DNA of 64,000 nucleotides from positions 14,632,001-14,696,000 of the forward strand of contig CM119378.1 of NCBI GenBank assembly GCA_051294905.1. Direction: 5' to 3'. The notes beneath the pieces were generated by a model. The model did not search any database and was not told the origin of the DNA. It saw nothing but the letters and a program-made list of their open reading frames with translations. Below are positions 7,166 through 61,725 of the stretch, in pieces. Numbering within the stretch: position 1 is the first letter of the stretch; every line of letters starts with the position of its first letter. Source of the DNA: Botryllus schlosseri. Lineage: Eukaryota. The translations under genes were made by a program, and so were the position numbers.

Positions 7166-8584
7166 GTTAATAGGCTTGGCTATTGAACAATTATGGGTAA
7201 ATTATTTAGTTGTGTAAAACGTCCCACTTAATGTCAGAATGATTGATGTAAAACATTGCTAACAATCGGATTGTTACGTGATCAGATCGCACTTCTCCTC
7301 TCGTGGGAAAATGACATAACTCAGTAGCAGTACGACCCGTTTTTCAATACTGACTAAACGCGGTAGATTATTTATGATAGGCACTATAGTTTTGACTCAT
7401 TTTAACTGGTGAACAAACCTTATCTTTAACCTGCTACATAGCTATACCAATGTTTAGCTCGCGAAATATATGTGAGACACTAGAAATGGGCGTTATTGCA
7501 ATCCATCTACTTCTAATATTGTGTGAATGATTACTCAGGTGATGGATTGCCCTCAATGACATGCCGTATGTAAGCGCGTTCATCCTCGAGCTTATGAGAC
7601 ACAGGACTCTGGCTCCTCTCGCAGCCCCGCACGCGACTGTCCGACAAGCGTCATTTCGCGGATACGACATGGCGAAAGGGCAAATGGTAAGTCAGAAATT
7701 GTGATTTTTCGACAACTGTTGTTTTCCTGGAACGTTTGCAGGTTTTGCCCAACATATGGGCGGTCCACCACGATCCGAAGAACTTCGAAAATCCGTCGGA
7801 ATTCAATCCTGAGCGGTTTCTGGACGGTGACGGGAAATTCAACAAACATCCAAGGGTGATCCCTTTTTCACTCGGCCCTCGATATTGTATTGGGGAACAG
7901 CTTGCAAGAATGGAAATATTTCTCTTCCTAACCAGCATAGTTCAACGTTTTGAGATTGTTCCCGATTCGTCAAGACCGCTGCCCGAATTAGACGATGGTA
8001 ATTCTGGAATTACAGAAGTCCCGAAGATGTTCGATGTTTCGTTTAAAGTTAGAATATGATTTCCTCATTGATTGCGGATAATTTCAGTGTAGCTCATCGA
8101 AAAATGATCGCAGCCTATACCAGTCAGGAAAATTGGAAAATTGGTATTTTGTGAAATAACTTTGCGCCACAGATAGATAGGTTCATTTATTTGCCAAACC
8201 TGCGAAATCCGGTAGGGAACAAGTATACAACGTGGAAGCCGTGAGGCCTTCGTACCTCCATATATAGAAGAAACGATACGATGTACGATACGATGGTTCT
8301 CAACCGGGGTGCCAATAGGACTGGCTGGGGAGCCGCGAGAAAATAAGGTATACAGTCGTTCCCAACCTTTTTGTCTTCGCGGACCCCGTTTTGGGCCGTC
8401 ACGGACTATTCATAGAAACAAACAACAACTGTCGTCTATTACATTTTGTGGCATGTTTATAGCTCAATCAGAGCCACAAGAAGGCTACCTCGGAGCCGCG
8501 GTTGGGAATCAATGGTCTACAAGCTAAACTTAAAGTTGCGTGCGAATAAATAACGAAAATCTGATTGTATCTCATTGCATATCT

Positions 8585-8815: not shown

Positions 8816-10190
8816 TTCCTATAAGAGTTCAGGGTTTATTGAAAATGGATCAAAAAGTAGTTATTCACAGAAGTGAAAACGCTAGTTAGAAAACGGTATA
8901 TGCGGGTTACATGAAGAATATAATTGTTACACAAAAAGAGAATTCAAATATTCCTGGTCGCACTCCTTTTTCGCTTATGACTAACAGCTTCTCGTCCTCC
9001 AGAAAAAAATACGGAATCGCGGTATAATAATAATGAACCAAATTTCAACGTCAGTTAAAATATCTTGCATTCCTCCCACCACGACGCATACACGGACATA
9101 TTGCCAGATTATGACTAAACAAAGCAATGAAAGATGTATGTCAAGGTCTAGCGTCGTTGAAGCCACTGTTTTCGCAGTTTATATAACTGTATTCAACCAG
9201 CAATCGAGTCGTCATTTATCGTTCACTCGACTTGACTCGAGTCATTTTCTCGTCCTAATTCGCTGTACCAAACATCGTACGCCTTGAAATCTTAGCTTGC
9301 ACAATGCTTTGAATAATTGGAGCAGTGGTTCCCAACTGGGGGGAATTCCCCCCTTAGGGGGTATTTTGTAGTTTTCAAGGGGAATTTTGCTTTATAATAT
9401 ATAACGGATTTACCCAATGTTTCATTTCCGAACTGTCAAGTAGAAAATTAGATATTTCCGAGCGTATGTTCTTTTCGGGTGTTTTTGTTGTTGTTGCTGG
9501 AAGTATGTTCAACTGCTATTTGAAATCTCTAGTGGCAATTAGTCCAACGTCATCGATTCAAAAGAGATCGCAAGTGAACTTACTTTATTTTTAGTGAACA
9601 GCTACCCGAGCGATAAAAACATGCTAAACCTATGGTGCAATGTTGCCAAAACGGAAAGTGACGAACTATAATTTCTTGTGCTATATTTTTTAGCCAGAGG
9701 GCGAAAGGGACCATGACTTCAATTCTTTAGTAGTTTAATGAGCAATAAATAGACTATCTGGGGGCAAATTCATTTAATCTGAGAAATCTGAAAACCAAAA
9801 ATGAATAAAATAACGCATTAATACGCTTGATTTACAGAATTGAGTAAAACTTTATTTGAAATTATGAACGGACGGTATTTTTTTAGTCTCGCTTGAGGCA
9901 GTAGGGATACATCAGTCTAGAGTTGTGCAGTAGGCTAGTGCGGGACCATTGCGCACGTGCATATTCGCGCTAGGACACATCATGACATATGAACGTTTCT
10001 CAAAATCTGCGAATCCGCAAAGTGTGCCCCCAGAAAAATCGACGGTGATAACACTTAAAATCCAAAATGACCGACAAATGTTTACCGAACAATCGATATT
10101 GATATGACTGCGTGGCTCCGAATAGTCTGCCCTTGAAATCTGAGCCCAGCGGTACAAATGAGACCCGACGAGGAAACACATCACCTAGGC

Positions 10191-10670
10191 AACAGGAAGT
10201 GAGATTTATTGCTCATGTTTGCTCCAAAGTTTACATATATGCAGATACCAATTCTCGGACCAACTGTTTGTAATTGGGTGCTTTGTAATCTACATCCTAG
10301 AAGGGACTCCATGCAATGAGACCCTGTCTTAGCATGAAATTGGAATCTTTCATACGTGTTCGAATCTGAGGTTCATCAAAGATACCAGATTTAAGCTTCT
10401 CGTTTGATAGGGATACTAGGTATCTACCCCCTTTTTCGGCTCAGCGAAAAATTATCGATTTAAAAATCGAAAGAGATGAGACGCATATGTGTAATTTAGT
10501 TATGTTCTCCAGAGAAAAACTTGATAGCTTTATACTCCTCTTTCATCTTGGTAGAATGACCAATTGGTACAGGAGAAAATATATTTCCGTTGTGCAAAAG
10601 TACAATTTTTAGGCTTGACAAACTGCTTTTTTAACATACAAAGATCTTGATGGAATAAGTGAGAACGACA
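10191..10670 (+). repeat. Left arm of a ~0.5 kb inverted repeat pair (partner 14801-15301)
   Basis: AACAGGAAGTGAGATTT...GACAAACTGCTTTTTTAACA matches the reverse complement of 14801-15301 along its length, with substitutions and small indels. Confidence 0.85.
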
Positions 10671-11143
10671 ACTACGAACAACAACGAGTACTGAAAATGT
10701 CGTTGTGTTGACTAAAATTAAAGGTCATTTGCCATTGATATACTCTCGAATGACTCGCTCGAACTCCGCATTACAGATTTCGCGTCATTCGCGTTTTTTA
10801 ATTCAGTCTGTCCATTAGCTTTCAAAGCTATAAAGTAGGACGAGGAGACACGAACACTGGGAATCCGCACACCGTGAGCATTTCTCAATCACCATTCAAC
10901 GTATTCAGTCAACTATCACGCAATCAAGAAGCCAGAACGCTGACAGGCAGTGAAAGCGCACTTGTATTGTATCCTAGAAGTATTCAAGTATTACGTAAGA
11001 AATGAAAATTACAGACCGCACCGCAGACCTTCACGCACATCGGTCAAAATGAAATACGTAATGCCGCCCCATTTCGAAATTGATTTCTTGCGAGCAGAGA
11101 AGAAAATGCAGAAATGACGATATTGTCGCCATACAGTGTGACG

Positions 11144-13370
11144 TCATCCTCGCTGCGTCTTCTTCCCAGCTGCCCCTTTCTGAACGACCGCGTACACGTC
11201 GCCACCTTGCGGATCTGTGCGCACGACCTGCGCGTACGTGTCGGTCACCGGAGGCGATCGAGAGTCGTCCGCCAGATCGTACTCGTTCTGCGCCTCCTCG
11301 TGTGACGTCACAAGGTCGGGTCTCGCGGCCTCGTCATAGAGCGGGTTGTCGTTGGTCTGGCGCGTATCGTCGGCGGATCGTCTGTCTTCTTCTTTGTTCC
11401 TGCGGGAGAGAATGGGAATGTTCCTGGCAACTGTCAACGCTAAATTTCGGATTCGGATTCAGCGCCCCAAATGACCCAAAGAAATCATTCCACAGATATC
11501 GTGCAACGTTATCTGTCTGCAATTTACGACTAACAAACCGCGTCGTATCGCGCAACTATACACCTCCTAGACCAGTGGTTCCCAACCGGGAGGAATTCCC
11601 CCCTTGGGGGGAATTTTGAAATTTTTATGGGGGAATCTGGCTAAATTTTTTTAGGGGAAATCTGGCTTTGGCATTGTATCGGAAGATACACTTGGTTCAC
11701 AAGGTTTTTAGATTTTTATGGTATAGAACTGTCAAGTAGAAATTAGTTCTTTACAATTGTATATTTCTTTGGCGGATTTCAAGCTAGGTGTATGTTTAAA
11801 TGCCTTTCGTAGATATTACACCCCCTGATAAAGTGAGGCTCACGAGACGATTTCGTTGGGTCCACGACAGCAGCCTCTCAACCAAATTGCTATTAAGTAG
11901 GAAAACGTCAAGTCGAATTCAGCGCAAGGCCGCTAGTGAAATTGTTTCAACTTTTTAAGCCAACATATGAGCTAACGTGAAAAACATACCGTACCAAATT
12001 CATCGATTCCCCTTAAGTCCATATCAAGCGGACTTGGTGATTTATTCTTCGTCAGCGGCTACTCGACCGGTCAAAAACAGGTCAAATTTGACTGTAATTA
12101 ACCAAAGTTTAGTGCGGTCCGCATTCGCCATAGTTCGGACACATCTGAATATATTTGGCCATTAATTGCTCAGTCAACAAATGGTTGCGAGCGAAAAAGC
12201 ACATTTTTTTAGTCACAGGCAACTTTTTCATAGGGGGAATTTTAGCTCAAATATCGGACAAGGGGGGCACGAGACGAAAAAGGTTGGGAACCACTGTCCT
12301 AGACATACTCAAAATAACAAAAGCCGATTGACCAAGTTGACTCTAGTTTGTTCAAGTCTTCGCGTTATGACGATGAAATCGGCTTTTCTGTCAAATTACT
12401 ACAGAACTTAACTTCAGATTAACTACCTGCACTTCACAGTCCAATCTCACCTTTTGCACCGAAATGCAATGATTGCCAATACCACAATGAAAACAATCAG
12501 GCCTCCAACTATACCTCCAATGATACCCGCGTATGGAAATGAACGTTGTAGTTGCGGCAATGACGCCGTGTTGTTGATCTGTGCTTCGGTTGTGCCTAGA
12601 CAGGAATACAGCGTTTCAGGTTACTACTTACTGCACAGGAAAGTGATTAGACTGCACTTTCTATCTCTCCGACTTGAACTAGAGATGTGCTTCCACTGCC
12701 AACAGTACATTTCGCGGGTTCCTTCACTTCGCCGCTGCACTGAGACAGTCGAACCGTAATGTTCCATCCGTCTTGCTTGTGTGTAAATGACTCTAAAGCG
12801 ACAAAGTCAGGAAAGGCGATAATGTTATTTCAAAACCAACTTGATTCTCCGCATTCCCTAAATCTCGTCAAGTTGTAGACGTTCAATTTGATTCTGTAAA
12901 CTTCTATAGCCGTCCAAGTGCAACTAGAGTCCGCTGGAGTCGCGTAGTTTGATTCATTGCTTGTTTTCCATATTACGGGGCACTGCCCGGCCACCATCGG
13001 AGCAGTCACTGTAAGCAAAGTATCGGTTATCGGCGTATAACAGTATCGATAAGCACACAAACCTGCTATTTTCACGATTACTAACAGTAGCTCCAGTATG
13101 ACGGAACACTTTGAACTAATCCGAACCTTATACTCAAGAAAACTAATGGTAATCATGTAAAATTTCTGAATTTTATATAACTTGAATCAACTTCAGTGAG
13201 ATATTTTCATTTACCCCGTTTGCCTCATCCGCTCACGTTTATCTGCTGATCACTGACACGCAGCTTGTTCAACACAAAAAATATGGAACATACACTTTTC
13301 TGCGCTCATATCGGCCACGACAACTGCAACAAAAGCAATTTTGAGGAAATCCTACCAGACTCGCAACCAT
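11144..13370 (-). CDS. Type I membrane receptor-like gene: signal peptide, CUB-like ectodomain, TM, tail with 4 Tyr motifs; this copy has an apparent +1 frameshift in exon 1
   Basis: Predicted exons 13370-13294, 13008-12841, 12792-12658, 12595-12451, 11399-11144, with consistent phases (1,1,1,2). TM GIIGGIVGGLIVFIVVLAIIAF followed by RCKR. Tail contains NPLY, EYDL, DTYAQV and DVYAVV. Ectodomain SNY..P.DSSCTWT....YRIKLNVYNL...C ... DGWNITV resembles a CUB fold (inference). The last two exons are strongly supported; the donors at 12840 and 12657 are weak. Confidence 0.65.
11573..12296. mobile_element. hAT MITE (724 bp) in the last intron of the receptor-like gene
   Basis: TIR CAGTGGTTCCCAACC; perfect TSD TCCTAGAC (11565-11572 and 12297-12304). 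Confidence 0.9.
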
Positions 13371-13499
13371 GGCGAAGGCAACATTCTTTCCATTGCTATT
13401 TTGACAACGCTGAGTCAGCCATTTCGCCTTACTTCCTGCCATTTAGATCGGGTTTCTGGCAGCAAACTTTCACCAACAATAGCAAGTAGATGACATGCT

Positions 13500-13505
13500 T
13501 TTATT
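13500..13505 (-). terminator. Candidate polyadenylation signal (AATAAA) of the adaptor-like gene
   Basis: AATAAA on the minus strand about 400 nt after the stop at 13908 and about 130 nt before the next ATG at 13370. Confidence 0.4.
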
Positions 13506-13907
13506 GTTCTTGGTACTGAGGCTAGATAAATAGAACTGAATTCTAAAATCCGTTAACTATAGTGCGATGTGAACTATAGCGCTTGCGATTACTGGATCTG
13601 ACATCTCGACCTTGCCTTCCTAGTCCCACACATGGCACCTCAATAACGTCATCTCCCATAACTTTCCCTTCAGTGTGCTTTTTACATCGCCCCCAGGATG
13701 TTTGATTTCAAAGACTATATACTCAGAGTTGTTTCCTAACTTTTCACTGCATCGCAATCTTGTGGTGTTTTGAAGCGATGAAATTATCAATAAAACTTAT
13801 GCATGTTTGAAAAAGGACACGGTCGGTCTATTCAACGTTCGAAATGCGATAGGTCTCATCAAGTATTGAAAAACACTTAGGACTATCGCGAGGATGTGTA
13901 TTGAAGT

Positions 13908-15419
13908 TCATTTTGCGTGGGAAGAGCCAGCGGATACGTTGACTTGTTCGTACGCTGAACCCTCTTGTAATGTCTTAGACGCGTTGGGAATATCTTCGTA
14001 ATTACGAATTGAAGCTTCGTACGTCTCGTAAGCTCCCGCCGCCTGCTCGTCTGTATGCGCTGCCATGTCGATTGCAGGCGTGTCGACTTGTTTGTGGTTC
14101 CTGAACCGTCTGATGCTGAAATTTGAGTGTCGTTTATTGACGACTTTGCAGCAGCGAACGTTGGAAACTCACTTTCTCGTGCCAACGACGATAATTTCAA
14201 CGAACATCATTCCGATCGCACCGCCGACAATCGCCACCGCGGCCACGTTCGAACATTCCATACTTTTGCTTCTAAACCACGAACAAACCTCGAGCTAATC
14301 TACTTCCTGCTATCTGAACGTTTGACTCATCTAGTGCGCAGAAAAGATCGCGTCGCAACACTGAAACGCGCATGATGTCATGCTTTGGCGTGAGAATGGC
14401 GTGAGTCGCAGCAAGCAAGCAACGCTCTCTGATAGGGGCATTTCGACGCAGGGTCCTGGTATCAGGGATGTCCCTGCCTGGTATAATTGATGTCGCTTAC
14501 TGATTCGAACCGCGATTAATCGAGGCAATACATTTTTTCGGCTTTCTGTAGCTGGTCTACAGGATGACAAAGAAAATTGGTAGAACATCTAGGAGTCGTT
14601 TCTGGGGTTTTCAAGGTTGCTAATTACGAATATCACATTGGTTTCGCCAGATTGGCTCTAGAAGAGAAGATATTTATATCCATAAAAAGCTTAAAATCAC
14701 TGTATTTACCCTTGAATATTTCACTTGGTAGGACGTAAATCTTAGATTCTTCTACTTTTATACTGCGCATAAATAGATAATTGACTATGATGAACACTCA
14801 TGTCGTTTTCAGTTATTCCATCAAGCATGACCTGATCCGTGAACTTTGTTTGTTAAAAAAGCAGTTTGTCAAGCCTAAAAATTGTACTTTTGCACAATGG
14901 AAATATATTTTCTCCTGTACCAATTGGTCATTCTACCAAGATGAAAGAGGAGTATAAAGCTATCAAGTTCGTCCCTGGAAAGCTTAACTAAAGTACTCGT
15001 ATGCGTCTCATCTCTTTTCCCTTGTAAATGGATGATTTTCCATAAAGCCAACAAAGTGAGTATACCTGGTATCCATATCAAACGAGAAGCTTAAATCTGG
15101 AGTCTTTGAGGGATCTCAGATTCGAATACGGACTAAGAATTACAATTTCATATTAGGAAAGGTGATCACTGCATTGATGTAGTAAATAAAACTTTTTGGA
15201 AGATCACAAAGCACCCAACTATACAAACAGTTGGTCCGAGAATTGGTATATGCATATGGAAACCTTGGAGTAAACATGAGCATTAAATCTCACTTCCTGT
15301 TCAGTCCTCTTGATATATTTTCTGATAATATTTTTGATTAGAGGGAGTGGAAAGGAGAAAGGTTCCACCAATACATAACAACCACAAAAGAAAGATATCA
15401 GTGAAGATGCGACGAACAT
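13908..15419 (-). CDS. Small single-pass adaptor-like protein (about 162-172 aa): signal peptide, short Cys ectodomain, TM with Glu, ITAM-like tail
   Basis: Predicted exons 15419-15294 (MFVASSLISFFCGCYVLVEP..., donor GTGAGA), optional 14657-14628, 14556-14501, 14271-14173 (SKSMECSN-VAAVAIVGGAIGMMFVEIIVVG-TR, donor GTGAGT), 57-nt intron, then 14115-13908 (NIRRFR...AYETYEASIRNYEDIPNASKTLQEGSAYEQV...AK stop). All junctions are GT-AG and phase-compatible. The TM and tail exons are the best supported. Confidence 0.7.
14801..15301 (-). repeat. Right arm of the inverted repeat; occupies intron 1 of the adaptor-like gene and overlaps its exon 1 donor
   Basis: Reverse complement of 10191-10670. Similarity ends at 15301, 8 nt inside predicted exon 1. 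Confidence 0.85.
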
Positions 15420-18400
15420 ATTATGGCAGACTATAGCTGGAACCTTTCGAAAAACTGCACTAAATTGCTTACAACCGAAAATAGTACAAGAACCAATTTT
15501 CCTTTAAGATAAGTTAATAATATATTATTCCAACTGATTATTTCGAATTTAAAATAGTCTCCGATTATGATAAATCTAATACCACGAGATATAATTCTGT
15601 TGATGTATTTTGAAACAGTCTTCAGCATGTCAAAATAACAAGCAGATTGAATTTCTGAACTTTATAGTACGACTGAGCCGATTTTTTATTATCCAGCCCA
15701 TACAGCCAAAATATGAGATTTTAGTAATATTAGTAACGTATTTACAATAGCTATTTATAGACGATAACTGTAACCGTTTATGACCACTACAACGAAGATG
15801 TCGTTTTAGTTGATTGAAACGTGTTGTGAAAAACCTAGCGTGGATCATATATGATCCACCCGCTGGTTAACTGAAACCATTTCACTTGCGAAGATTAGAA
15901 ATTGTATTTTGGTAAATTGTGATTGCCCAGATTGAATAAATTATATCGTGTCCTTGTTTACAGTCAAAAATAAAAATTATTAAATAATTATAAATTTCGG
16001 TTTTAGATGAAGACTGTATAGTGTATATACCGTCTAATTTGAATTTGCCCGACACAAATCTGTTCTGAGCGGCCCTGGAATTCAAAATAAATAATCTACC
16101 ATTGACTGTTAATGCGTGGACTAAAACCGACTGAACTGGAACTTCGTTTACTTTGAAGACTGTTTATTTATGTGCCGCGATTACGTAGCCTACGTACGTC
16201 CATGCGTAGGCTATAGTCCCTATTCAAAATAAAGTCAATGTAGCGAAGTATACCGTAATAATTGAAGTCACAAGCAGTCACTGTTTCCATATAGTCCAGT
16301 TCAAATCAGTGCTCGTGATTGAGTCATCATCAACCATAAAGTAGGGATGGTGTGAACGTGTGCGGTTCACGTTCGCGTTCTGTGTGTGAACCTCAGAAAT
16401 GTGGAGGTTCACGTTCACAAACGAACCTTGGAAGGTTCTGCACTGTGAACCGTTTTCATATATTACAGTCTTCACTTCATTATAACATCTTTGATTGCAA
16501 TTTATTGCATTCAACTGCAATACTACTATGCATAAAGTGCTTTCATATTGAATCTTCAGGTAAAGAATCGACACTTAATTATTACACAATCATGTGAATT
16601 ATAGCTAAAGACAGCTGTAGTCGAGACTCGAGAGTCGAGACTCGTAACAAAATTGAGGTGAGGCGGAGAGAAAGTTCAATATAAACGCGGCTCAGTAGTG
16701 TATTCGCCACTTCTCTTCGCTTATTTACATTAGCGTCGGATTGCTTGAGACGCGTCCTGTATATCAAACCTGTGTATCAAACCATTGAGCCGTGACCGAT
16801 CTATCCTACAACAATCTCGCAACAATATTGTTGCACGCACAGTTGTTGAATAACTTTCTAAATGTCTTGAGCAATACGCCGGATATGTTGCAGGCAGATG
16901 AAAGTTGTTGCAGTGTAGTACAGTACAATGCAGTGGTAAATCGGTAATGTCGTCGATAGTTCCGTCGTCTGACGATTTATTCACTATCTCACTTCGGTGC
17001 GTATGAAGACTGTGTGATGAATGGGCGTCACTTCAATTCAATTCAATTTATTGCTAACAATTTCATCATTTCAATACACCACAAGACTGCGATACAATGC
17101 AAGATAGGAAACTGTCGAAACGACTTGGAGTAGTCTTCGAAATCACACACCCACTTGGCCTAGGCGATGTAAAAAATGAGGCATGTGCACTGAATGAAAA
17201 GTAAAGAAGATAATATAAAAGGTCAGGCGACAAAAAGAGGTGGCATGTGTCGGAAGGCGAGATCGATATTTCAGGTCGTGATCCGGTAAACTAGAGCGCT
17301 GACTAGTATTGATCCAGTGATAGTAATTGTTTGTATTTCGACTTAAATGTGGATATGGACAGGGACATGCTCGATCACTGTAGGATAGCCGGCGAGATAC
17401 TATTTCACAGTGCAGGCCCGGCATATTTGATAAAGCGATGATCTTATTTGTCGGCCTCGGCCATATGGTAGTTGGACGACGTGGGCGGGCGTCTGTTGTA
17501 CTTTAGTACTTTGTACTTATATATACACTTTTGATAGCGAGTTAAGAAGCCATTGGCAGTGACCACAGTGGAACTGATAGCCTATACATAACTTATCAAT
17601 TTCTAAGTTTTGGCATATCTTTTATGTTTAGGACACCGAATGTTTTGAGCAGTAATTTGTTGGACACACATCCTGGCCCCTGGCCCTGGCTATGATACTT
17701 CACGCATTGTCTATAGTTCCTGGTATAACTATTTTTATAAATTCAAAACACCGGAATACTACGATTAAATGAAAAGATAGGCACCCACGTTGACCTTATT
17801 TACATGCTGTGGGCCCAGAAGGGTGTCTAATCAAAATACCAGGGGAAGGTGGAGCACAATGTGCCCAAAACACAATTTTAGTCATAAATATATTTCGAAT
17901 CCAGAAATACCAATGAACTTTAGCAAAACGACGGATGAACATTAAACGTATATTTCCAAAGAAAGAAGATTTCAAAATACGAAGAAATAACGAAATCACA
18001 GTCACTTGAAAAACTTACCTTTTTTGTCCAATTATGCCCCATAGCCATAAGTCATCTAAAACACAGTCGAAAGGTAGCGATGTAAATTAACGCAGGCAAA
18101 ATTAGGAAACTCGTCATTTACTCATAAAGATAGCGACCCTGGCGAAATCAAACCACATCAGGACTACACCTGATATAACATTACATCATCGAAGAGATGT
18201 ATATTATTCCTGTCGGGTTTTTAAAATATTCACGATGTACCATTGTACTCCTGTATCCATTGCGCCCCGTCTTCCCGGGGTTAAGAATAACATAAGCTAA
18301 CGAAAAAGACAAGAAATTAAACTTAAGTGGCATGTATCGATGATCGAGGTATAGATATATGCCTGATCGTGATCTGATAATCTCGAGCGCATACCAGTAT

Positions 18401-20362
18401 GGTACGACCAATGCTTTTTTGATAAGTTTAAACCCTATTGTCCTACAATGGTGTGGTCTCAAGCAAATCTCATGGCTTATTGCGATTGGGTTACATCTCA
18501 CTTTCCATTTGACCGAAGGCGGTTTTGCGGCAATTTTTGACCGGCTTTCCGAGCGCGAAAATTGATGAAACTGGTGTCAATTGAAAGCTACCGTGGTACT
18601 GATTGCGAAAGTATTAATTTTTCTCGTGCTAGTGGTCCTGGAACCCCAAAAATCAGTCTCGAATTTTGAACTGTAACTGAGTTTGATATTATGACGCAAT
18701 AGTGCAATCTGTAACCAAGTTATGAGCTGCGCAAACCGCAAGCGTATTGGCCATTGTTACACAAGCGATTAAGCATTCACACTCTCGATGTGCAACGTGC
18801 ACTTGTTCCTGTTTTGCGACATACTATTCAAAGAGACGCTTAGGAGTACAGAACTTCATAACACATTTGAATAAAATATTCATATTTATTCCCGAAGCTT
18901 TTTATGCCAACAGAAAGAATTTGTGAATCATTTGAAAATCGCGCATTAACTTGTTTTGCTTCGCTATCTCCATGCCAACGCTTCAGTTCTCTCGTTTTCC
19001 TAACTTTGTATATTTTCTGTGTGACGTCATAATTAGCGATATATATTGTTGTTCAACATAGTTATTCGAATTCTCGCAATATTGCTGACGATATCCCGTG
19101 ACGAGGGTCAGCCGAAAAGCTTCGGGAATAAATATGAATATTTTATTCAAATGTGACATACTATTCCCGATGGCTTTGTTCCGTCACAATGCAAAACACC
19201 GTTACAATGAAAAATTTGAAGTTGATTTTGACGGGTGCTAGAACAAAGAGCACAATAAAATTTATATTTTACGTAATCAGTACCACGGTAACTTTCAATT
19301 GATACGATTTTTTTCGTGTTTTTCGCCGAGTAAGCCATGCTTACTAGTGCCGTAAATTGCCTTTGGGCAAATGGAAATAATGACGTGAACCATGTCCTAC
19401 GAAAAACAAGGCCTCACACCCAACCTTTTGACCTGAACATTAAGAGGGCGAAAGTCGATCTTTCAACCCTTACCAGATGTGCACTTCACTGGTCAAAAAA
19501 TGCCATATTGCCATAATACTTCCTGTTTCTGGCACTCTACTAACACACCAAGGCAGAATGCTTGTAAAAATAGTCTATTGCAGGCATATATAAGGGACCA
19601 ATACACATATACTGCATGACGAGATGCACATTGCGCTTCATAAGTATGGTGCATATAACTGAAGAACGATATCAACGAAATCTGTTATGTAGAACTATGC
19701 AAGTATACACATTGAACTCCAAATGGCATGGTACATATAAACTGAAAATATTAGCAACGAAATGAGCACAACCAATGCAAATTAATACAATAAAATCTGC
19801 ATATCTTGAGAAAAGTATTTGCAAAGCTATCGAATTTGAGATTCAGGAAACAAATTTGTCAAGACATTACTACACGATCATTTCTTTTTGTCTTTGCCTC
19901 TGTCTACATTGGCAAACATGGTCTTCTCTGAGGAAGGAATGTACTAATTTCTGCATATTTTTATTTAAAAAAAGACTACAGTTACCTGCAACGCCGCAAC
20001 TGTTAAATTTTTGCAATGTTCATTACAAGCGATTCGGGATTTACCTATCACGAATTTTTATACAAATAATATTGCACGTCACAGTTAGATATCAGCTGAT
20101 TAGACGAATCTGGAGCAGGGGAGGAATAGAATATGTAACGCGTGAACGAATCGCAATGAGGACACTGTGGTTAAACTAACCGTCAATGACATTACAGACA
20201 AACGTTCTTCGGCGTGCTCGTAACTGACGTTACTAAGGCCTTGAGGTTGCGTGGTATACCACATTATAATGTATATATCGCCGCATAGTTGACAGTTAGA
20301 ACATTGCATGTGTGCCAGGGTTATACACGTCCATAATGATATTTATTGATTCTGTATAGGTG

Positions 20363-23300
20363 ATGCTGGATTCCGTTGGCCTGTACCAATTACTAGCGGT
20401 AGCGTTGGTACTGTTGTTCGTATATTTTTGCCGTAATCGTGAAAATCGACCACCAGGTCCATGGGGACTTCCAGCTTTGGGCTACTTACCATTTATCGGT
20501 AAGTATCCTTCCAGAAGGTATTTTGAACTGTCAAAGAAATACGGACCTATCATTAACGTGAAACTGGGATCTAAGAATATCGTCGTCCTTAACGACTACG
20601 AAAGCATACAGGAAGTAAGTCGTTCTATTTCTCTACCAGATATGAGTAAGATTGCTATAGCAACCCTATATTTCACTTTTTTACATCTCATGCATATTAA
20701 GGCGCTTGTAAAACAAAGTGACGTATTTTCCGATCGACCCCGCAACGAGTTTATTCACAAAATGACCGGAGGTTACGGAATGATCTTCCAGGAGTTCAAC
20801 GAGGAGTACAAGATTCAAAGAAAGTTCGCTCTTGCAACTTTGAGGGGGTATGTGCGGATTCCAACTGAATAAACTGCCCGACTAATCGGGCGGATTTAAT
20901 GTAGGCTTGGGGTTGGAAAACGAAGCATGGAAGGCAAGATAATCGAAGAAATTGAAAAATTATGTCACGAAATTGGATCACGAAACGGACAACCCTTCAA
21001 TTGCCAAGTAATAAAATGATTTTTCTCTAAACATGAAAAACATCAGTAATGGACCACAAGAACATTTTAGCACTGGGCAGTAAAGTAATTTACAAAATTG
21101 TAAAGTTGTTGAGATGTTTTTTTTCTTGTTATTGTTTAGTTTACTTCTTTTGTTCCTCCTAACGATATATTCATGTTGCCATATTTATTCTACCTCAAGC
21201 TGTTTCGGCATCACTTGCGAACGTCCGTGCATGCGAAAAAGTTGAAGAATATTTTCACAAAATGGCAAGGAAATCGACTCTTGAGCGGCATATGACCACG
21301 CAAACTTAACAGTGAAGGCCCAAATTTGGCGATAAAATACCCGAAGACGATCGCTATGCGAATAAAATATTCCCATGCAGTCATCTGTGTCAGATTGCGA
21401 AGATGACTAGTCTCAATTTCGAGTTGAATATCATATTGTTCCCGTCTAGATAACTGGTATTGAGTTATTAGCTATTGTATCAATTTGTTAACGCCGTTAC
21501 GATAGCCTATCGCATTCCTTTTTGGTCCTCGTGAAACATGTAACATTCATTGCAGGAAACTCTGTCTGCTGCTGTGTCAAATGTAATATGCAATGTCGTT
21601 CTGGGGTCACGATTTTCGTACGATGATGAAGATTTCAAGGGAATGCTGAAGGCTGTTAATGCGGAGTGAGTTATCTGCATTACAAGACATAATATCATAT
21701 ACTTGCACGGGCTATTGTTTATTAGGTTCTCGGATAAAATATATGCATTTTGTGTCAATATGCTAATGCTCGCACCTCAACTAAGATTCATTCCGCCATT
21801 TTCTAAAGCACACAAGCGGATATTCGAAGATATAGATTACGTTCTTGGTGAGCGACCCTTTTCATTGCTATGCATGGAGCGTGATTTTAACACTGATAAC
21901 TAGATTTACAAAATTGATTCGGTCAAAAACATGCGCAAATGAGCGCACGGAGCTCGCACGTCAGTGCAAATTGGCTGCAAAAACAGACTGCTATGATGAT
22001 TACCAAGCATATGCTTCGTCAATCGGTCAGCATCTGAGCGAAAACCTTGCCTGTGCACAGCACTATGATGACAATATGTTCACTGTCATTGCGCGTGGTA
22101 GGTCTGTGTTTCATTTAAAAGTGTTGGAGTCTACTATTATTCAGTTGAGCAAACCTATTTTATGCAGTCAGAAAGATTTCCTCTATAACCTACAAATTTC
22201 TCATTAGTGCGTGTTGTTCCGTGCGTGTAATTGTTTATTTACAAATTGTGCTGTTACTATAGTACCGTTTGTCCGTATACTTCGTAGTTTGTGATTGTTG
22301 CCATTGATACAATGCGAATTTCATGGTCTGTGATTTTGATTGTTGCGTCATACTTTGCCTTTTTGGTTTTGCTTTTAAATCTGTTTAAATCCCTTCAGTG
22401 TGCCGATAACTCTTGAAAAGAGGCACCCGAAAAGTCTTCGAGTTTAATAAATATACTGCTACAATGGATGTTGTATTGAAAGCTATTTACAAATATGATG
22501 TTGGATATTATTTGTATCCATTATGATGCTATCCAGTGGTCGGGAACCTTTTTCGACCGAAGAGCCATATTGACACAATATTTCCATCTATAACTCCCAA
22601 AGAGCCATACATGTCAATCAACTGTTACGTCACAATTGAATATTCGTGACGTATTGGTAGCACTAATATATGGGATTCATAGTTTGCGCCATATTTTTCC
22701 CGTATGCGTAGCTGGAGCCAAACAGGTAATTGTCAATGTCACTTCTAAGGAAGTTTACTTTATCGGCGTAGAGCAGGAAGTCAATGTGTATTTGAAAACT
22801 GCATTGTCCAACAAGCGTCGCCATGTCAAGGTATCAAACAAGGTATCGTGCAATTCAAGATTTCGAGGCGCGCGATGGCGGGTATCGATCGAATTTGCCA
22901 GTGGTTTCAGTCGCCGGCGCGACAGCAACTTAAATTTTAGGATTTTCGAATGGGGGGTAACGAACCCCATACCCTGCTTACCCAACTGTGTTAACCTCTC
23001 AACGACATGTTTATGCTGCCAAGAGAATAATTATCCGGGTCGTCATCGAAATTTACTAACAAGTTGCAGCAATATTGATAAATTGAGTACAAAATTAAAA
23101 ATTTGTCTTTTACCCAAAAGAGCCACATATGGCTCGCGAACCATAGGTTCCCGACCACTGCAGTATAGACTATAGACAAAGTCAACGGCAAGTCTGGATA
23201 CTGTCAGTCGCTTATTACATCCTACCATTACTTCCTGCCGTAATTGCAGTATACAGTTTCCTAATATATTTCATATCATAATGCAAAAATAAAAGCAAAT

Positions 23301-26300
23301 GCTCCAGAAATTTTCCGATGTCTGATATTATCACTGGCGAACAACATTTCACTGGATTTTTTTTAAATGAGAACGTGAGTTTGTGATTTTCGGTATATTT
23401 TTCACTCTGATTCCAAATCTGCCAATAATTTTTTTCTAGCATATCATTTTCAAGATATCACCGAACTTGTACTTTCCAACGAAATAAAAGAAAATATAGA
23501 TGTGTACAGCTATTTTTCATGACCTTTAAACTGTTTAGCATATGATTTTCTTGTACACATTACCGAGATCAACACGATAGAACGTCCAGCCGCATTCCCA
23601 CATTATTACCTCATTACAAAGATCTTGGTGACGAGCTCCCACTTCCATAGTTCGAATGTCCTGGGGAAATGGTTCAGTTAGTTCTTCATTAACTGCACCA
23701 TATACAAGCATTGTACTGAATAGTAGGGATTGTGTGAACGTGAGGTTCACCATCGCGTTCTGTGTGTGAACCTCCGAAATTTACTTTCACAAACGAACCT
23801 TGGTAGGTTCTGCAGTGTAGACCTTTTTCAGGTATTACATTTTTCACGTCATATAACATCTTTGGTTGGAATTCTTTGCATCTCACCTTCGGCCCACTCT
23901 ATGCATGGCGCTGATAGCATAAAAATTCAAAACTACACGAGCATGCACCTTGTCGATCTCAAAATCTTTACTTGCTTTGTTACAAAAGTTTGCTCGCAAT
24001 AATCAGCTCTACGTTTGTGAATATTTAGTGACTCTCTACCGTGAGCTTGACCCGCAATCACACAACATCAAGAACGAACGAAATACACTACACGTATGTA
24101 GTCATCGAATGATGCTTATTACACCAATCAATGAAATTGATATAAAGAATACATCGTTGTCTAATGTCAAAAATTTCGATGGCGTACGGGATCCATCTTG
24201 ATTTGACATGTTTATTGTAACATTAAAACCGAATCCGTGCGATTGGGTACTCTATAGCTTGTTTATGGGGTAATATTGGTAGCAAGTATAGAAACCCGTT
24301 TTACACTCTGCTCAAAATCAATATAGTAAATTTAGTAATGGTCGGACGCCGAATATATTGTCCGATCTGGCCTAGGCCGTTAAGGCGTAAGCTTATATTC
24401 CCATGCAAATCGAAATTGCTGGCAAAGCCACGGAAGAGATTGCTTTTAAGCGATTATTATAGCATTTGACTGCTCCAGTTGATACATTTGGTGACGTTTA
24501 AAAATTCAGCATGCTGTAGCCTTCAGCAATATGGCATGATTGTGGCCTGGGTCGTCGCTAGGTATCTGGTATATCACTTCACTGAAATGTAAGGTCGGAA
24601 TTATCAATATGACATCACGTGACGCCATAGGTTCACGTTAACGTTCACACAGAACCTTTCAAAAACGCTCGCGTTCACACGAACCTGAACCTTTTAGGGG
24701 TTCGTACCACCCCTAAAATAGCTTCCAAAAGGACTTCGATGCTTTCATAAAATTGTTTCGAGTGAACGTGCTATAGGATCTGACAGTCTTATATTTCTAT
24801 CATGCGACAATACAGCGTTTCACCATCTCTTCGACGAGTCGCTGAAATAAATCTTTTCTCATTCAAGAAATTTTGAGAAAGATATGGGAGGAACACAAAA
24901 GGTCACTGGACCCCGAGAATCCACGAGATTTTATTGATGAATACTTGATTCGTATGCAAAGTAATGATACGAACGACTCATCGTTCTGCGTGAGTATGGG
25001 CTAGCTAGATCAGGAGTAAGCAACATAAGGTCAAGGGAGGTTTACATTATTACATTATAATGGGGCCCGCTGCCACATCAATCTGCTACTATGCTTGTTT
25101 ACCGCGTCAAATGGTTTTAGTCAAATTAGTTTCAGTTTAATTCTAATTTTCCTGTAAGCACTTATGCTAAATATACATAAATACATACGCTATGTTTCTT
25201 CATAAATGGCCTCCGTGAATCTGGCGGTATTTTTCTTTAACTCTACAATAATTCTTCCGCGAGCCACTATCCGCGGATTTTGCAGAGAAACATAGACCCT
25301 GACAGGTTGACAAGACGGTACTTGTTTTGTTAGGGTATATCAAACATTTTTGACAATAAATATTAATAAGCCAAAGCTTCGTTCCAATCTAACTAATTGA
25401 CTCAAGTATTCTTCACTGGGTAGGTCTTGTACGTAGGGTTGCACTTAAAACAAACGGTGTTTGTTTTAAACAAAGCCTTTTAAAAAAAAATTGGGTTTTT
25501 TATAAGTTGTAAAACTATGCCATAATTGTGTAAATTTTCCAAAAAACATGCTGTATGAGCCTACGGACAATTACCACCCGATATCGTCGAAGTATATCGA
25601 TGTGACGATGTGGGATGCTTGGAACCCTCAAAATAGTCGGTTCAACAGCAATAGTACAGACATTTCGTCAAAGGAGCTATATTTACCCTATATTTTCAAT
25701 TGCCAATGTCAACCCATTATGACGTCACAATTAAATATTCCTGACGTCCTAGCTTTAAAAAAAACATGTTTTAAACAAGGGCCTATCGTTTTAAACATGT
25801 TTGTTTTAAATTGATTTTTGTTTTAAATGCAACCCTACTTGTATGCAGCTTTAATTCTTGAGAGAATATTGAAAATTTTGAGCGATCACAGATGCCCCAT
25901 TGACTTGAGCATATATTGAAGTATACGTTACACTTTCATTCATCAAGTTTTGTTTCTATGCCAACAATGATCGAGAGATTTGTTTCGCCAACCGATGATA
26001 AGAAATTAATAAAGACGGATTACTTGTATGCACGGATGAATACTCGATTTCTATTACGATTCCAGAATCCTGCTTCCGTAGCGCTGGGGAATCGCACAAA
26101 TTAATCGGCGACTCCTATACTTCCTACTCTTAGCAATTGCAAATTGCTTCTGCGGTTCTGTTTCCGACTCCGAAAAATCAAATTTCGTGTCTCATACTCC
26201 TACACCTCCGACTCTCACGTGGCCGAAATTTCTCACATCAACCCCCGAGTCCTCCTCAATTATGTCAATAACTCACTTTTCGACACTCGCAACTAGAACT

Positions 26301-43989: not shown

Positions 43990-44565
43990 CTGTAGATCAA
44001 GGCTTCTTCTATAGGCTATCGCTATTCCCAACGTTATGAGCGCATTCCTGTCTTTTCGTTTTATCGCAGTTTTGTATGGTTTTGAAATGATGAAATCAAT
44101 AATAAAATCTGAATTGAACTGAACGGCCTATACGGCCTATACGCAGTGTGAAGCTCAGTGCATAGTTTCATAATAATTTCGTCATCTCGTTTTCGATGCT
44201 ATTCGCAGATTAGCGGTCAGCCAGTGTTGGCAGTTGGCGCATTTGGAAGCCAAATTTCGGAATTTTGGCTCATTTTCATACTGGCTGTCATCAGGATAGT
44301 GAGTTTGGCACGTTGGCCTCATTTTGGAACTTTCGACTTTGATCGACTATCACAATGTAAGTTTGTTGACAGCAATAAACGTGCGCTGAGATTCATGGCT
44401 GGTGAGTCACTATATTTTACGAAAAATTCGGCTCCCAGAGCCTTCTCACAGTTGGCAACTCTGGTCTGGTCTGGCCTATATAATTAGTTCACAGCAGAAC
44501 GTTGCAAGGCTGCCATGGTTAGATTCCTCCATAATGATGTTTTGTTGATCGTGTTGTTGTAGAAG

Positions 44566-61030: not shown

Positions 61031-61725
61031 TTTTGGGATAATTGTAATTGCTTGTGTTGTGCCGGGGGATGGAATTGATAGTCATATAGGCAGCAGATTC
61101 ATTAAGAACTTCGCACAATTATTGACAAGTGTGATTGTGTTGAGTTTGTGAATAAGAGAAGCGTGGAGCCTCCTAAAATAACTGACTGGGGAAGAATATA
61201 CTGCCTGAATTACAATGTTATTGCTAGTTGACTATATGATACAACATATGACTTGCTGTCTGCACGATTGTAGCTTCTTCCGATTTTGACCATGTCTTAC
61301 TATATCCTGCATATTTTGTGGTGTCTTGCAACTATATTAATATCTTGAATGATTTGCATCCAACAAAATATTTACCTGCCCTGCTAAAGTCTGTGAACTT
61401 TATTTGTGATGGTAGTCAAATATCTTTCTCGGATTACCTGGTGAAGTTGGTATAGTAATGGATAAGTGTATAGACAATTATCCCAAAATATGTGTAATAG
61501 CCTATCCATTGATTCAGGAGGAATCACATGGAAGCATGTGCAGAAGTGCGTATCTTGCTTCATTCGGTCCGTTTTAAATTGCTTTACCTTTGCAATGTCC
61601 TGTTTTAGGAATGATACATGAGCAAAACCTTTGAAATGACCGTTTTCATTTAAATTGTCTTACAGAAAGCTACTAATAGCGCTATACAATAAGCTTGAGA
61701 TCATCCGACGCCTTGTGAGCTCGCA

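What the first reader, a model, noticed from the sequence alone, without database searches (positions are those of the whole stretch)
11144..15419. Hidden two-gene tyrosine-motif receptor module (possible activating/inhibitory pair) between P450 paralogs
Seen in sequence: two adjacent co-oriented spliced genes, invisible as such in the ORF track. Each has a signal-peptide-like first exon, a Gly-rich TM (AIVGGAIG versus GIIGGIVGG), a phase-2 intron right after the TM and a tail with four tyrosines. One tail is ITAM-like with an acidic TM residue; the other has tandem YAxV motifs. Established knowledge: linked activating/inhibitory receptor pairs are a hallmark of vertebrate NK and myeloid receptor complexes. 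As I recall, Botryllus fester genes are paired with co-receptors carrying Tyr motifs (verify). Inference: this is a compact invertebrate-chordate recognition module, with an adaptor and its partner or antagonist side by side.
Basis: partly seen in the sequence, partly recalled or inferred. Interest (0 to 1): 0.85.

Follow-up and report, generated by a model that had tools for sequence, protein, structure and literature searches.

The report
Two small tyrosine-tail membrane protein genes
Two neighbouring, unannotated sea-squirt genes are real and transcribed: one encodes a tiny membrane adaptor and the other a small CUB-like receptor, both with tails full of tyrosine docking motifs, but nothing tested shows that they work as an activating/inhibitory pair.

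Summary
Both genes lie on the minus strand between cytochrome P450 genes, and RNA confirms both.

**Gene B (265 aa).** It has five exons, and all four introns are confirmed as GT..AG. It encodes a signal-peptide-like N-terminus, a glycosylated five-cysteine ectodomain that is only weakly CUB-like, and a Gly-rich membrane segment. The tail carries NPLY, YDL and tandem DTYAQV/DVYAVV.

**Gene A (98 aa).** It has two exons, and 53 raw reads plus one contig confirm the junction. The transcript begins between about 14283 and 14390, so the protein starts MECSN, directly followed by the membrane segment (Glu22). Its tail has four YE tyrosines, including YEDI-x12-YEQV. This makes it a leaderless adaptor of the LAT/LIME/SCIMP kind.

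**What holds.** The phase-2 intron after each membrane segment and the four tail tyrosines are confirmed.

**What does not.** No strict ITAM is present. Gene B has no basic membrane residue to pair with Glu22. The tails are not detectably related. One transcriptome holds B without A.

No homologue turned up in protein searches (the widest, of 1.84 billion proteins, used only gene B exon 2). The scan had noted each gene separately before, on this same stretch.

**Verdict.** These are real, lineage-restricted candidate phosphotyrosine-signalling genes. The pairing is unproven.

The parts
14173..14390 (-). Gene A exon 1. The 5' end is heterogeneous, between about 14283 and about 14390. The coding part is 14173-14261 and begins MECSN, followed by the membrane segment with AIVGGAIG and Glu22, then Thr-Arg. 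A possible (trans-)splice acceptor TTTAG lies at about 14283, 22 nt upstream of the ATG. Three short upstream ORFs exist if transcription starts at 14390.
   Evidence: raw-read depth is 29 in bin 14237-14433 and 0 in 14434-14630, and 5 molecules end at 14390. One search gives the translation and hydropathy. One search lists the upstream ATGs.
14116..14172 (-). Gene A intron, 57 nt, GT..AG, phase 2 (the split codon AA|C gives Asn30).
   Evidence: joint 14115->14173 in 53 raw reads (37 start places) and one X3 contig..
13750..14115 (-). Gene A exon 2. It encodes the basic stop-transfer stretch IRRFRNHK and then the tail with Y59 (YETY), Y62 (YEAS), Y69 (YEDI) and Y85 (YEQV; SAYEQV also fits the ITIM pattern). 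The stop codon is at 13908-13910. The 3'UTR runs to about 13723-13758.
   Evidence: contig pieces 13758-14115 (X3) and 13723-14072 (X1), raw-read depth 87 at 13843-14039..
13063..13415 (-). Gene B exon 1. The ATG is at 13156 and encodes 31 residues of a signal-peptide-like leader (hydrophobic core residues 17-32, interrupted by Glu22 and Lys29). Raw reads suggest the mature 5' end lies below 13252. A good acceptor (TTCAG) lies 10 nt upstream of the ATG. One contig extends to 13415.
   Evidence: X3 contig record 17, raw-read depth 4.3 at 13055-13251 against 0.38 at 13252-13448, and an in-frame 9-nt insertion allele at 13148..
12841..13008 (-). Gene B exon 2, the first half of the ectodomain. 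It holds Cys41, Cys61 (a C-x-W-x-x-I motif), Cys84 and the NES and NLT glycosylation sites. It is CUB-like by protein-language-model features only.
   Evidence: joints 13008->13063 and 12792->12841, and an in-frame 3-nt insertion allele at 12924; 57 of 100 nearest Atlas clusters are CUB, at scores of 0.83 or less; no Pfam hit; no real homologue.
12658..12792 (-). Gene B exon 3, the second half of the ectodomain (Cys106, Cys116, NIT site).
   Evidence: joints 12792->12841 and 12594->12657 (16 raw reads, 2 contigs)..
12451..12595 (-). Gene B exon 4. It holds the stalk (NNT site) and the membrane segment with GIIGGIVGG and no charged residue, then the juxtamembrane residues Arg-Cys179-Lys.
   Evidence: weak Syndecan transmembrane match, E 0.0013, 19.1 bits, below the cut-off of 25.2.
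11400..12450 (-). Gene B intron 4, 1051 nt, phase 2. It holds a roughly 730-bp MITE-like element (about 11572-12297) with 15-nt terminal inverted repeats, CAGTGGTTCCCAACC and its complement.
   Evidence: joint in 3 contigs and 7 raw reads, and very high contig depth (up to 3000) inside the intron; a second copy of the end at 9320-9389. Sequence read.
10603..11399 (-). Gene B exon 5. It encodes the tail, including NPLY (Y202), EYDL (Y221), DTYAQV (Y236) and DVYAVV (Y250). The stop codon is at 11144-11146. The 3'UTR runs to about 10603, into the left inverted-repeat arm.
   Evidence: contig pieces 10603-11398 (X3) and 10607-11398 (X1)..
15219..15419 (-).
   Evidence: no joint reaches it, and raw-read depth is 1.6 or less here and 0 between it and the membrane-segment exon; inverted-repeat arm 14841-15301.
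10191..10646 (.). Left arm of an inverted repeat (83% identical to 14841-15301) that brackets both genes. It is a dispersed repeat, judged by the high contig depth.
14841..15301 (.). Right arm of the same inverted repeat.

Best explanation
These are two separate, lineage-restricted protein-coding genes for single-pass membrane proteins whose cytoplasmic tails are phosphotyrosine docking sites.

**Gene A.** It encodes a 98-aa leaderless (type III) transmembrane adaptor. Five residues, including Cys3, lie outside the cell. A Gly-rich membrane helix carrying Glu22 follows, then a basic stop-transfer stretch and a 68-aa tail in which every tyrosine is followed by Glu. I infer that a Src-family kinase phosphorylates the tail. 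YEDI and YEQV would then recruit Src-family or Syk-type SH2 domains, as the YEAI/YESI sites of the vertebrate adaptor LIME do.

**Gene B.** It encodes a 265-aa type I glycoprotein with one compact, probably CUB-like domain, a GxxxG-type membrane helix and a juxtamembrane Cys. Its acidic tail carries NPxY and two closely spaced D-x-Y-A-x-V sites. I infer that it is a ligand-binding docking receptor.

**Shown versus inferred.** Shown here are transcription, exon structure, reading frames, hydrophobic segments and motifs. Inferred are topology, signal-peptide cleavage, phosphorylation and the SH2 partners. Adjacency is shown. Functional coupling is not.
For: - **RNA.** All junctions are confirmed, and one contig spans the whole of gene B. 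Gene A is present in RNA contigs of at least 4 studies. In-frame 9-nt and 3-nt indel alleles occur in gene B coding exons.
- **Frames and hydropathy.** Open frames run across every junction, with one strong hydrophobic segment in A and two in B.
- **Topology.** Positively charged residues follow both membrane segments. The ectodomain of B has 4 N-x-S/T sites and 5 Cys.
- **Motifs.** The patterning is non-random, at p about 2e-5 for each tail.
- **Protein Atlas features.** Both tails fall nearest the same two unnamed clusters of small proteins. After those come tails of SCIMP, LIME, PAG and SIT for B, and of SCIMP, GAPT and opalin for A. Exon 2 of B falls nearest CUB clusters.
- **Literature.** PMC3342071 defines TRAPs as having a short ectodomain, one membrane segment and a tail of tyrosine motifs without enzymatic activity. 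In LIME, pYEAI and pYESI bind the Lck SH2 domain (PMC2194117). Ascidians express Src, Syk, SHP-1 and the downstream machinery. Botryllus co-receptor tails use [A/D]VYxxV motifs in pairs, and DVYAVV fits that pattern (PMC12582321).
Against: - **No homologues.** No homologue of either product was found, so conservation of the tyrosines could not be tested.
- **Weak resemblance scores.** All Atlas scores are below 0.9, and their recognition values are low.
- **CUB not detected.** Pfam's CUB model does not hit either half of the ectodomain.
- **Polymorphism.** Most of the listed polymorphisms are non-synonymous: 9 of 12 in B and 2 of 2 in A. This fits fast evolution but also weak constraint.
- **Upstream ORFs.** Gene A has three upstream ATGs if its mRNA starts at 14390.
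- **Atypical leader.** Gene B's leader has Glu and Lys in its hydrophobic core.
- **Other readings of the motifs.** YxxV/I and NPxY are also endocytic sorting signals.
- **Untested steps.** No signal-peptide, membrane-topology or structure predictor could be run on the spliced proteins.
Confidence: 0.6

Rival explanations
1. This is the reader's model: the two genes form one functional module. Either gene A is the signalling adaptor of gene B, or the two are an activating and an inhibitory arm acting on the same pathway, kept adjacent for co-inheritance and co-regulation.
For: - The genes lie head-to-tail on one strand, about 310-560 bp apart.
- Their Gly-rich membrane motifs are similar and could pack helix to helix. 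Both have the phase-2 intron just after the membrane segment.
- Gene A has an extracellular Cys3, and gene B's ectodomain has an odd number of Cys (5).
- The tails differ in SH2-site flavour: YE-x-I/V in A against YA-x-V in B.
- Botryllus recognition genes are encoded as receptor/co-receptor pairs (PMC12582321).
Against: - Gene B has no basic residue in its membrane segment to meet Glu22, and it has its own signalling tail.
- The tails are not homologous.
- Transcriptome X13 has B without A. In the raw-read run, A is roughly 3-10 times deeper than B, depending on the bins compared. No read-through or shared transcript was seen.
- Gly-rich membrane motifs of this type are common in single-pass proteins (weak Syndecan match).
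- No second such pair exists in the 64-kb window.
Confidence: 0.15
2. The tyrosine motifs are sorting signals rather than SH2 docking sites. Gene B would be an endocytic or scavenger-type receptor (NPxY for PTB-domain clathrin adaptors, YxxV for AP-2). Gene A would be a small membrane protein trafficked by YxxI/V signals.
For: - NPLY and two Yxx[V] motifs are present in B, and YEDI and YEQV in A.
- The ectodomain is CUB-like, as in several endocytic receptors (the comparison with endocytic receptors is from memory).
Against: - The strict context of the motifs is typical of kinase substrates and SH2 sites. Glu follows all four tyrosines in A, Asp lies two residues before each of the two YAxV tyrosines in B, and both tails are rich in acidic residues. 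AP-2 signals do not need this context (established knowledge).
- The nearest Atlas feature clusters that carry a name are signalling adaptors.
Confidence: 0.15
3. Gene A is not a functional protein gene. It would be a transcribed remnant (membrane-segment exon plus tail exon) of a receptor gene that lost its ectodomain exons, or a non-coding transcript with a chance ORF.
For: - There is no leader exon, and upstream ATGs are present.
- No homologue was found.
- Both listed polymorphisms are non-synonymous.
- Its exon layout equals the last two exons of gene B-type receptors.
Against: - A 98-codon frame stays open across the splice site and has a perfect membrane segment/stop-transfer/tail layout.
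- The 4xYE pattern has p about 2e-5.
- Expression is robust in many runs and higher than for gene B.
- The ATG has a strong context (A at -3, G at +4) right after a good acceptor that could take a spliced leader (inference).
Confidence: 0.1

Closest known systems
Vertebrate transmembrane adaptor proteins (TRAPs): LAT, NTAL, PAG/Cbp, LIME, SCIMP, SIT, TRIM
   Same: - Gene A has a very short ectodomain (5 aa; LAT has 4), no leader, one membrane segment and a tail without a catalytic domain that carries several tyrosine motifs (definition in PMC3342071).
- YEDI and YEQV resemble the Lck-SH2 sites pYEAI and pYESI of LIME (PMC2194117).
- SIT and TRIM are disulfide-linked dimers through an ectodomain Cys (SIT: PMC2193021). 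Gene A has Cys3.
   Different: - No sequence similarity was detected.
- There is no juxtamembrane CxxC palmitoylation motif, no YxN (Grb2) sites, and the tail is much shorter.
- A Glu inside the membrane segment is not a TRAP feature.
- Homologues of LAT are reported absent from ascidian genomes (PMC12582321), so any likeness would be convergent.
DAP12 / DAP10 / FcR-gamma / CD3-zeta signalling chains
   Same: Gene A has a tiny Cys-bearing ectodomain, an acidic residue in the membrane segment and a short tail with two YxxI/V sites.
   Different: - There is no signal peptide exon.
- The acidic residue is Glu rather than Asp, and it lies near the inner end of the helix.
- The spacing is 12 residues rather than 6-8, and the second site ends in Val, so the strict ITAM is not met.
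- Pfam ITAM gives no hit.
- No partner with a basic membrane residue is seen next door.
- The preprint PMC11507803 states that no ascidian genome encodes DAP12 or DAP10 homologues.
Botryllus fester co-receptors (FcoR), PMC12582321
   Same: - Both are type I single-pass proteins of an ascidian with C-terminal paired tyrosine motifs.
- Gene B's DVYAVV fits core-2 ([A/D]VYxxV), and DTYAQV nearly does.
- Both are encoded next to another membrane protein gene.
   Different: - The FcoR ectodomain is Ig-Sushi-Ig-Ig. Gene B has one small CUB-like domain.
- Core-2 pairs in FcoR are 29-33 residues apart. Here 8 residues separate the motifs (14 from Tyr to Tyr).
- The neighbour is not a fester-family gene (Ig + Sushi + 3 membrane segments).
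- Whether this window is from Botryllus is not known.
CUB-domain docking receptors of vertebrates (CDCP1, DCBLD1/2); comparison from memory
   Same: They are single-pass receptors with CUB-type ectodomains and non-catalytic tails that are tyrosine-phosphorylated and dock SH2 proteins.
   Different: - Those proteins are much larger, with several domains and other motifs (YxxP in DCBLD2).
- No sequence similarity was found.
- The CUB assignment for gene B is only a lead.

Membership tests
ITAM (Pfam PF02189; YxxL/I-x6-8-YxxL/I) | Two YxxL/I sites 6-8 residues apart | tested here: not met
   there is no strict match in either tail. Only a relaxed pattern (x6-12, Val allowed) matches: YEDI-x12-YEQV in A and YAQV-x10-YAVV in B; no Pfam ITAM hit.
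ITIM ([S/I/V/L]xYxx[I/V/L]) | Small or aliphatic residue two residues before the Tyr, and an aliphatic residue three residues after it | tested here: inconclusive
   SAYEQV in gene A fits the pattern. The two YAxV sites of gene B have Asp two residues before the Tyr and do not fit. A pattern match alone does not show SHP/SHIP binding.
DAP12/DAP10/FcR-gamma/CD3-zeta chains | Cleavable signal peptide before a short Cys-containing ectodomain | tested here: not met
   no upstream exon is joined to the membrane-segment exon. The ORF starts at MECSN. Cys3 is present.
DAP12/DAP10/FcR-gamma/CD3-zeta chains | Membrane Asp that pairs with Lys/Arg in a partner receptor's membrane segment | tested here: inconclusive
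   gene A has Glu22 in the helix. The adjacent gene B has no charged membrane residue. Partners elsewhere in the genome could not be searched.
DAP12/DAP10/FcR-gamma/CD3-zeta chains | Detectable sequence homology | tested here: not met
   no homologue and no family hit.
Transmembrane adaptor proteins (TRAPs; a functional class, PMC3342071) | Ectodomain of a few residues, one membrane segment, and a non-enzymatic tail with several tyrosine motifs | tested here: met
   for gene A: a 5-residue ectodomain, one hydrophobic segment, and a 68-aa tail with 4 Tyr and no Pfam domain.
Transmembrane adaptor proteins (TRAPs) | Tail tyrosines phosphorylated by Src/Syk kinases and bound by SH2 proteins | not testable with these tools
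   This needs biochemistry.
Transmembrane adaptor proteins (raft subgroup: LAT, NTAL, PAG, LIME) | Juxtamembrane CxxC palmitoylation motif | tested here: not met
   gene A has no cytoplasmic Cys. Gene B has a single Cys179 after the helix.
CUB domain (Pfam PF00431) | Match to the CUB profile, and a roughly 110-aa beta-sandwich with two disulfides | tested here: inconclusive
   - there is no Pfam hit for either exon-encoded half (E up to 1).
- no PDB hit.
- 57 of the 100 nearest Atlas clusters for exon 2 are CUB, but scores are 0.83 or less.
- The Cys spacing and the C-x-W-x-x-I motif are compatible with CUB.
- The whole domain could not be submitted because it is split by an intron with a stop codon.
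Botryllus FcoR co-receptors (PMC12582321) | Ig-Sushi-Ig-Ig ectodomain; core-2 motifs paired 29-33 residues apart; encoded next to a fester-family gene | tested here: not met
   - no Ig or Sushi hit.
- the two motifs are 8 residues apart.
- The neighbour, gene A, has one membrane segment and no ectodomain.
Paired activating/inhibitory receptors (KIR, Ly49, PIR type) | Two paralogous receptors with similar ectodomains, one with an ITIM tail and one with a charged membrane residue and a short tail | tested here: not met
   gene A has no ectodomain, and the two proteins are not detectably paralogous.

The most novel reading that the evidence does not exclude
Gene A would be an ascidian counterpart, by convergence, of the DAP12/LAT class of small signalling chains. 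Published work says ascidian genomes lack homologues of that class. It would be genomically coupled to a non-Ig (CUB-like) receptor and would associate with it through the shared Gly-rich membrane helices or a disulfide. That would be a second, Ig-independent way of building receptor-plus-signalling-chain modules in a chordate without adaptive immunity.
Probability: 0.12. Interest if true: 0.7.

Novelty: new member of a known kind. Interest (0 to 1): 0.42.

Why it matters
Ascidians have Src, Syk, SHP and most of the ITAM/ITIM machinery. No homologues of DAP12, DAP10, LAT or SLP-76 have been reported in them (PMC12582321, PMC11507803), so how their surface receptors connect to that machinery is only partly known.

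A robustly expressed, unannotated 98-aa membrane protein with a Cys-bearing stub, a membrane Glu and four YE-type tyrosines is a concrete, cheap-to-test candidate for such a connector.

Gene B carries the D-V-Y-x-x-V motif outside the Ig-type fester co-receptors, and so hints that this motif is a more general ascidian signalling element.

If neither holds up, the result is still a corrected annotation of two hidden genes.

Tried and rejected
- **Homologue searches.**
  - The word-indexed search with gene A's tail found no candidate. The same search with gene B's tail found one candidate and no hit.
  - The full HMMER scan of 1.84 billion representatives with gene B exon 2 returned three hits. 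All are repeat-derived junk ORFs matching only 'PVLWKTSN'-like strings, with no meaningful Pfam content.
  - The PDB sequence search with both ectodomain halves, at E up to 10, found nothing.
- **Pfam on all six exon-encoded pieces.** The only result is a sub-threshold Syndecan transmembrane match.
- **Paralogy of A and B.** It was rejected for the tails. The high score in the 'whole C-terminus' shuffle test is an artefact of shuffling away the membrane segment, so I do not count it.
- **Paralogues inside the window.** There are none (tblastn).
- **Origin of the reads that join gene A's tail exon to other sequence** (22 reads at 14113/14115). The loose consensus letters are not in the window. 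They probably come from paralogues or alternative exons elsewhere. This remains unresolved.
- **Ciona-type spliced leader in the window.** No meaningful match.
- **Poly(A) signals.** None is canonical for gene A.
- The full-length spliced proteins have no reference and were not typed. SignalP-like, topology, Pfam-on-whole-domain, AlphaFold and Foldseek steps were therefore not run.
- **Supplement of the Botryllus paper.** It is not held as text, so actual FcoR tail sequences could not be compared.

Full report
**What is there.** The stretch lies on the minus strand between cytochrome P450 genes that run on the plus strand. The last exon of one P450 is at 7691-8056, and the first exon of the next is at 20360-20869. 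A third P450 gene lies at 44563-52504. All are confirmed with Pfam p450 at E from 1e-10 to 1e-44. Notes by other agents place this genome in the ascidians. I did not test that myself.

**RNA evidence.** I laid three transcriptome assemblies from three studies and one raw-read RNA run on 10100-16000.

Gene B:
- One 1610-nt contig (X3) and raw reads give four introns: 13009-13062, 12793-12840, 12596-12657 and 11400-12450.
- All four are GT..AG on the minus strand.

Gene A:
- The joint 14115->14173 is seen in 53 raw reads from 37 start places and in one contig.
- Gene A words are held by RNA contigs of at least four studies.

Between the genes (13449-13645) raw-read depth is about 0.4, so they are separate transcription units. 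The gap between them is roughly 310-560 bp.

**Gene models.**

Gene B has 798 coding bases and gives 265 aa:
- The ATG is at 13156.
- A leader-like N-terminus has its hydrophobic core at residues 17-32, interrupted by Glu22 and Lys29. Small residues (V-A-G) precede Gln40.
- The ectodomain of about 115 aa has Cys41, 61, 84, 106 and 116, and four N-x-S/T sites.
- The membrane segment spans about residues 155-177. It contains GIIGGIVGG and no charged residue.
- Cys179 lies just after the membrane segment.
- The 88-aa acidic tail carries NPLY (Y202), EYDL (Y221), DTYAQV (Y236) and DVYAVV (Y250).

Gene A has 297 coding bases and gives 98 aa:
- It begins MECSN.
- The membrane segment spans about residues 6-27. 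It contains AIVGGAIG and Glu22.
- A basic stretch follows (R-N-I-R-R-F-R-N-H-K).
- The tail has Y59, Y62, Y69 and Y85, each followed by Glu (YETY, YEAS, YEDI, YEQV).

- The proposed leader exon of gene A (15219-15419) is not used. No joint reaches it, raw-read depth is zero at 14434-14630, and five molecules end at 14390.
- Its downstream end (15219-15301) lies inside one arm of an 83%-identical inverted repeat (10191-10646 and 14841-15301). Judged by its contig depth, that repeat is a dispersed element.
- By my reading of the sequence, the three candidate donors I inspected in that ORF all leave phase 0. The acceptor at about 14283 needs phase 2 to keep the membrane-segment frame.
- Gene A therefore has no signal peptide. 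Positively charged residues after the helix predict N-out, C-in topology, giving a type III protein with a 5-residue ectodomain.
- Depth in bin 14237-14433 is about half that of the exon body. The 5' end is therefore heterogeneous between the acceptor-like TTTAG at about 14283 and about 14390.
- If the mRNA starts at 14390 it carries three short upstream ORFs. If a spliced leader is added at 14283, as is common in ascidians, the first AUG is the ORF's own and sits in a strong context. That is inference, not shown.
- For gene B, raw reads nearly vanish above 13252, and a good acceptor lies 10 nt before the ATG. The upstream ATGs seen in one contig are therefore probably outron or minor 5' extensions.

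**Are the motifs more than chance?** I shuffled each tail within its own composition.
- All four Tyr followed by Glu in A occurs in about 2 of 100,000 shuffles.
- Two D-x-Y-A-x-V in B occurs equally rarely.
- A relaxed bi-tyrosine unit (Yxx[LIV]-x6-12-Yxx[LIV]) occurs in about 1% of shuffles for each tail.
- These patterns were chosen after looking, so the figures overstate significance. The tails are nonetheless clearly patterned.
- The strict ITAM is absent from both tails. SAYEQV in A fits the ITIM pattern. The YAxV sites of B do not, because Asp lies two residues before the Tyr.

**Relatives.**
- None was found. Word-indexed searches with both tails gave nothing.
- A full HMMER scan of 1.84 billion cluster representatives with exon 2 of gene B gave only three junk repeat ORFs. 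It follows that gene B itself is not in that 15-billion-protein collection, so it appears unannotated.
- Pfam gave only a sub-threshold Syndecan transmembrane match for B's Gly-rich helix. PDB gave nothing.
- Protein-language-model features are leads only, with scores of 0.87 or less. They place exon 2 of B among CUB clusters (57 of 100).
- The same features place both tails nearest the same two unnamed small-protein clusters. After those come tails of SCIMP, LIME, PAG, SIT and ITAM-bearing proteins for B, and of SCIMP, GAPT and opalin for A.
- The two tails are not significantly similar to each other. There are no paralogues in the window.
- Twenty-two raw reads join gene A's tail exon to other upstream sequence that is not in the window. 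This hints at paralogues or alternative exons elsewhere.
- Scan notes list several other CUB-like single-pass receptors with tyrosine tails in this genome. I could not check them.

**Constraint.**
- Among the best-supported differences between runs, 9 of 12 in gene B and 2 of 2 in gene A change the amino acid. None touches a tail tyrosine.
- Both indels seen in B's coding exons are in frame (9 nt and 3 nt).
- This looks like a fast-evolving but frame-conserved coding sequence, as is common for surface receptors. It does not prove selection.

**How it most likely works.**
- Gene A meets the working definition of a transmembrane adaptor protein: a few extracellular residues, one helix, and a non-enzymatic tail with tyrosine motifs (PMC3342071).
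- Its YE-x-I/V sites resemble the pYEAI and pYESI Lck-SH2 sites of LIME (PMC2194117) and the pYEEI optimum of Src-family SH2 domains.
- The YEDI-x12-YEQV unit could take a tandem-SH2 protein. From memory, the Fc-gamma-RIIA ITAM also has a 12-residue spacer.
- Cys3 could make a disulfide dimer, as in SIT (PMC2193021).
- Glu22 suggests a membrane-embedded contact with some partner.
- Gene B reads as a small ligand-binding receptor whose tail offers a PTB site (NPxY) and two YA-x-V sites. From memory, YA-x-V fits the Csk-type SH2 preference.
- In Botryllus, the very similar [A/D]VYxxV 'core-2' motif occurs in pairs on fester co-receptors, including the partner of the activating receptor uncle fester (PMC12582321). 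The sign of the signal therefore cannot be called from sequence.

**The pair hypothesis.**
- For it: adjacency, shared orientation, similar Gly-rich helices, shared intron phase, and an unpaired-looking Cys on each side.
- Against it:
  - B has no basic residue in its membrane segment.
  - B has its own tail.
  - There is no homology between A and B.
  - A has no ectodomain.
  - Expression is unequal and separable: X13 holds B without A, and in X23 A is roughly 3-10 times deeper than B, depending on the bins compared.
  - No second example could be examined.
- I put it at about 0.15.

**Comparison with the known.**
These genes are nevertheless not FcoR/fester members. They have no Ig or Sushi domains, the spacing between the paired motifs is different, and the neighbour is of a different kind.
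- They are not DAP12-family members either. There is no leader, no strict ITAM and no homology.
- The same authors state that ascidian genomes lack DAP12, DAP10, LAT and SLP-76 homologues (PMC11507803, PMC12582321). This is what gives gene A its interest as a possible convergent stand-in.

**Verdict.** The finding is real and the annotation is corrected here. The functional reading is plausible as 'phosphotyrosine docking proteins'. It is unproven as a 'pair'. These are new members of a known kind. Interest is moderate.

Noticed in passing
window 10191-10646 and 14841-15301: An inverted repeat of about 460 bp, 83% identical between arms, brackets both genes with 4.2 kb between the arms. Gene B's 3'UTR ends inside the left arm. 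High depth in RNA contigs suggests a dispersed repeat family rather than a structure specific to this locus.
   Followed up: partly
window 11572-12297 (intron 4 of gene B); related end at 9320-9389: A MITE-like element of about 730 bp has perfect 15-nt terminal inverted repeats (CAGTGGTTCCCAACC). It is very abundant in transcriptome contigs, with depth up to about 3000. An alternative joint 11398->11994 (4 reads) suggests occasional exonisation of part of it.
   Followed up: partly
window 14113-14115: Twenty-two raw RNA reads run from gene A's tail exon into upstream sequence that is not the membrane-segment exon and is not found anywhere in the window. They probably come from paralogues with a near-identical tail-exon start, or from alternative first exons elsewhere.
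   Followed up: partly
window 13148 and 12924: In-frame insertion alleles occur in gene B coding exons. One is 9 nt in the leader (three extra residues) and one is 3 nt in exon 2. They are seen in the contigs of one run (9-nt) or two runs (3-nt) but not in the window's haplotype.
   Followed up: no
window 12595-12747: One X13 contig uses an alternative donor inside exon 3 of gene B (it skips 151 nt, CT..AC). This would shift the reading frame. It is probably a minor or non-productive isoform.
   Followed up: no
window 13731-13785 and 17059-17112: A short repeat fragment (84% identical, inverted) lies in gene A's 3'UTR. About 35 raw reads on each side run off into unrelated sequence there, so the depth at 13646-13842 is partly from other copies.
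   Followed up: no
window 7691-8056, 20360-27904, 44563-52504 (+ strand): Three tandem cytochrome P450 genes of similar sequence (CYP2-like by my reading of the heme-binding motif) surround the locus. The two membrane protein genes sit antisense in the first intergenic gap.
   Followed up: partly
window 61699-63999 (+ strand): A stop-free frame of 767 aa runs off the window's end. It is very rich in Lys, Arg, Ser and Glu, and looks like an RS/KE-rich nuclear protein. I did not examine it.
   Followed up: no
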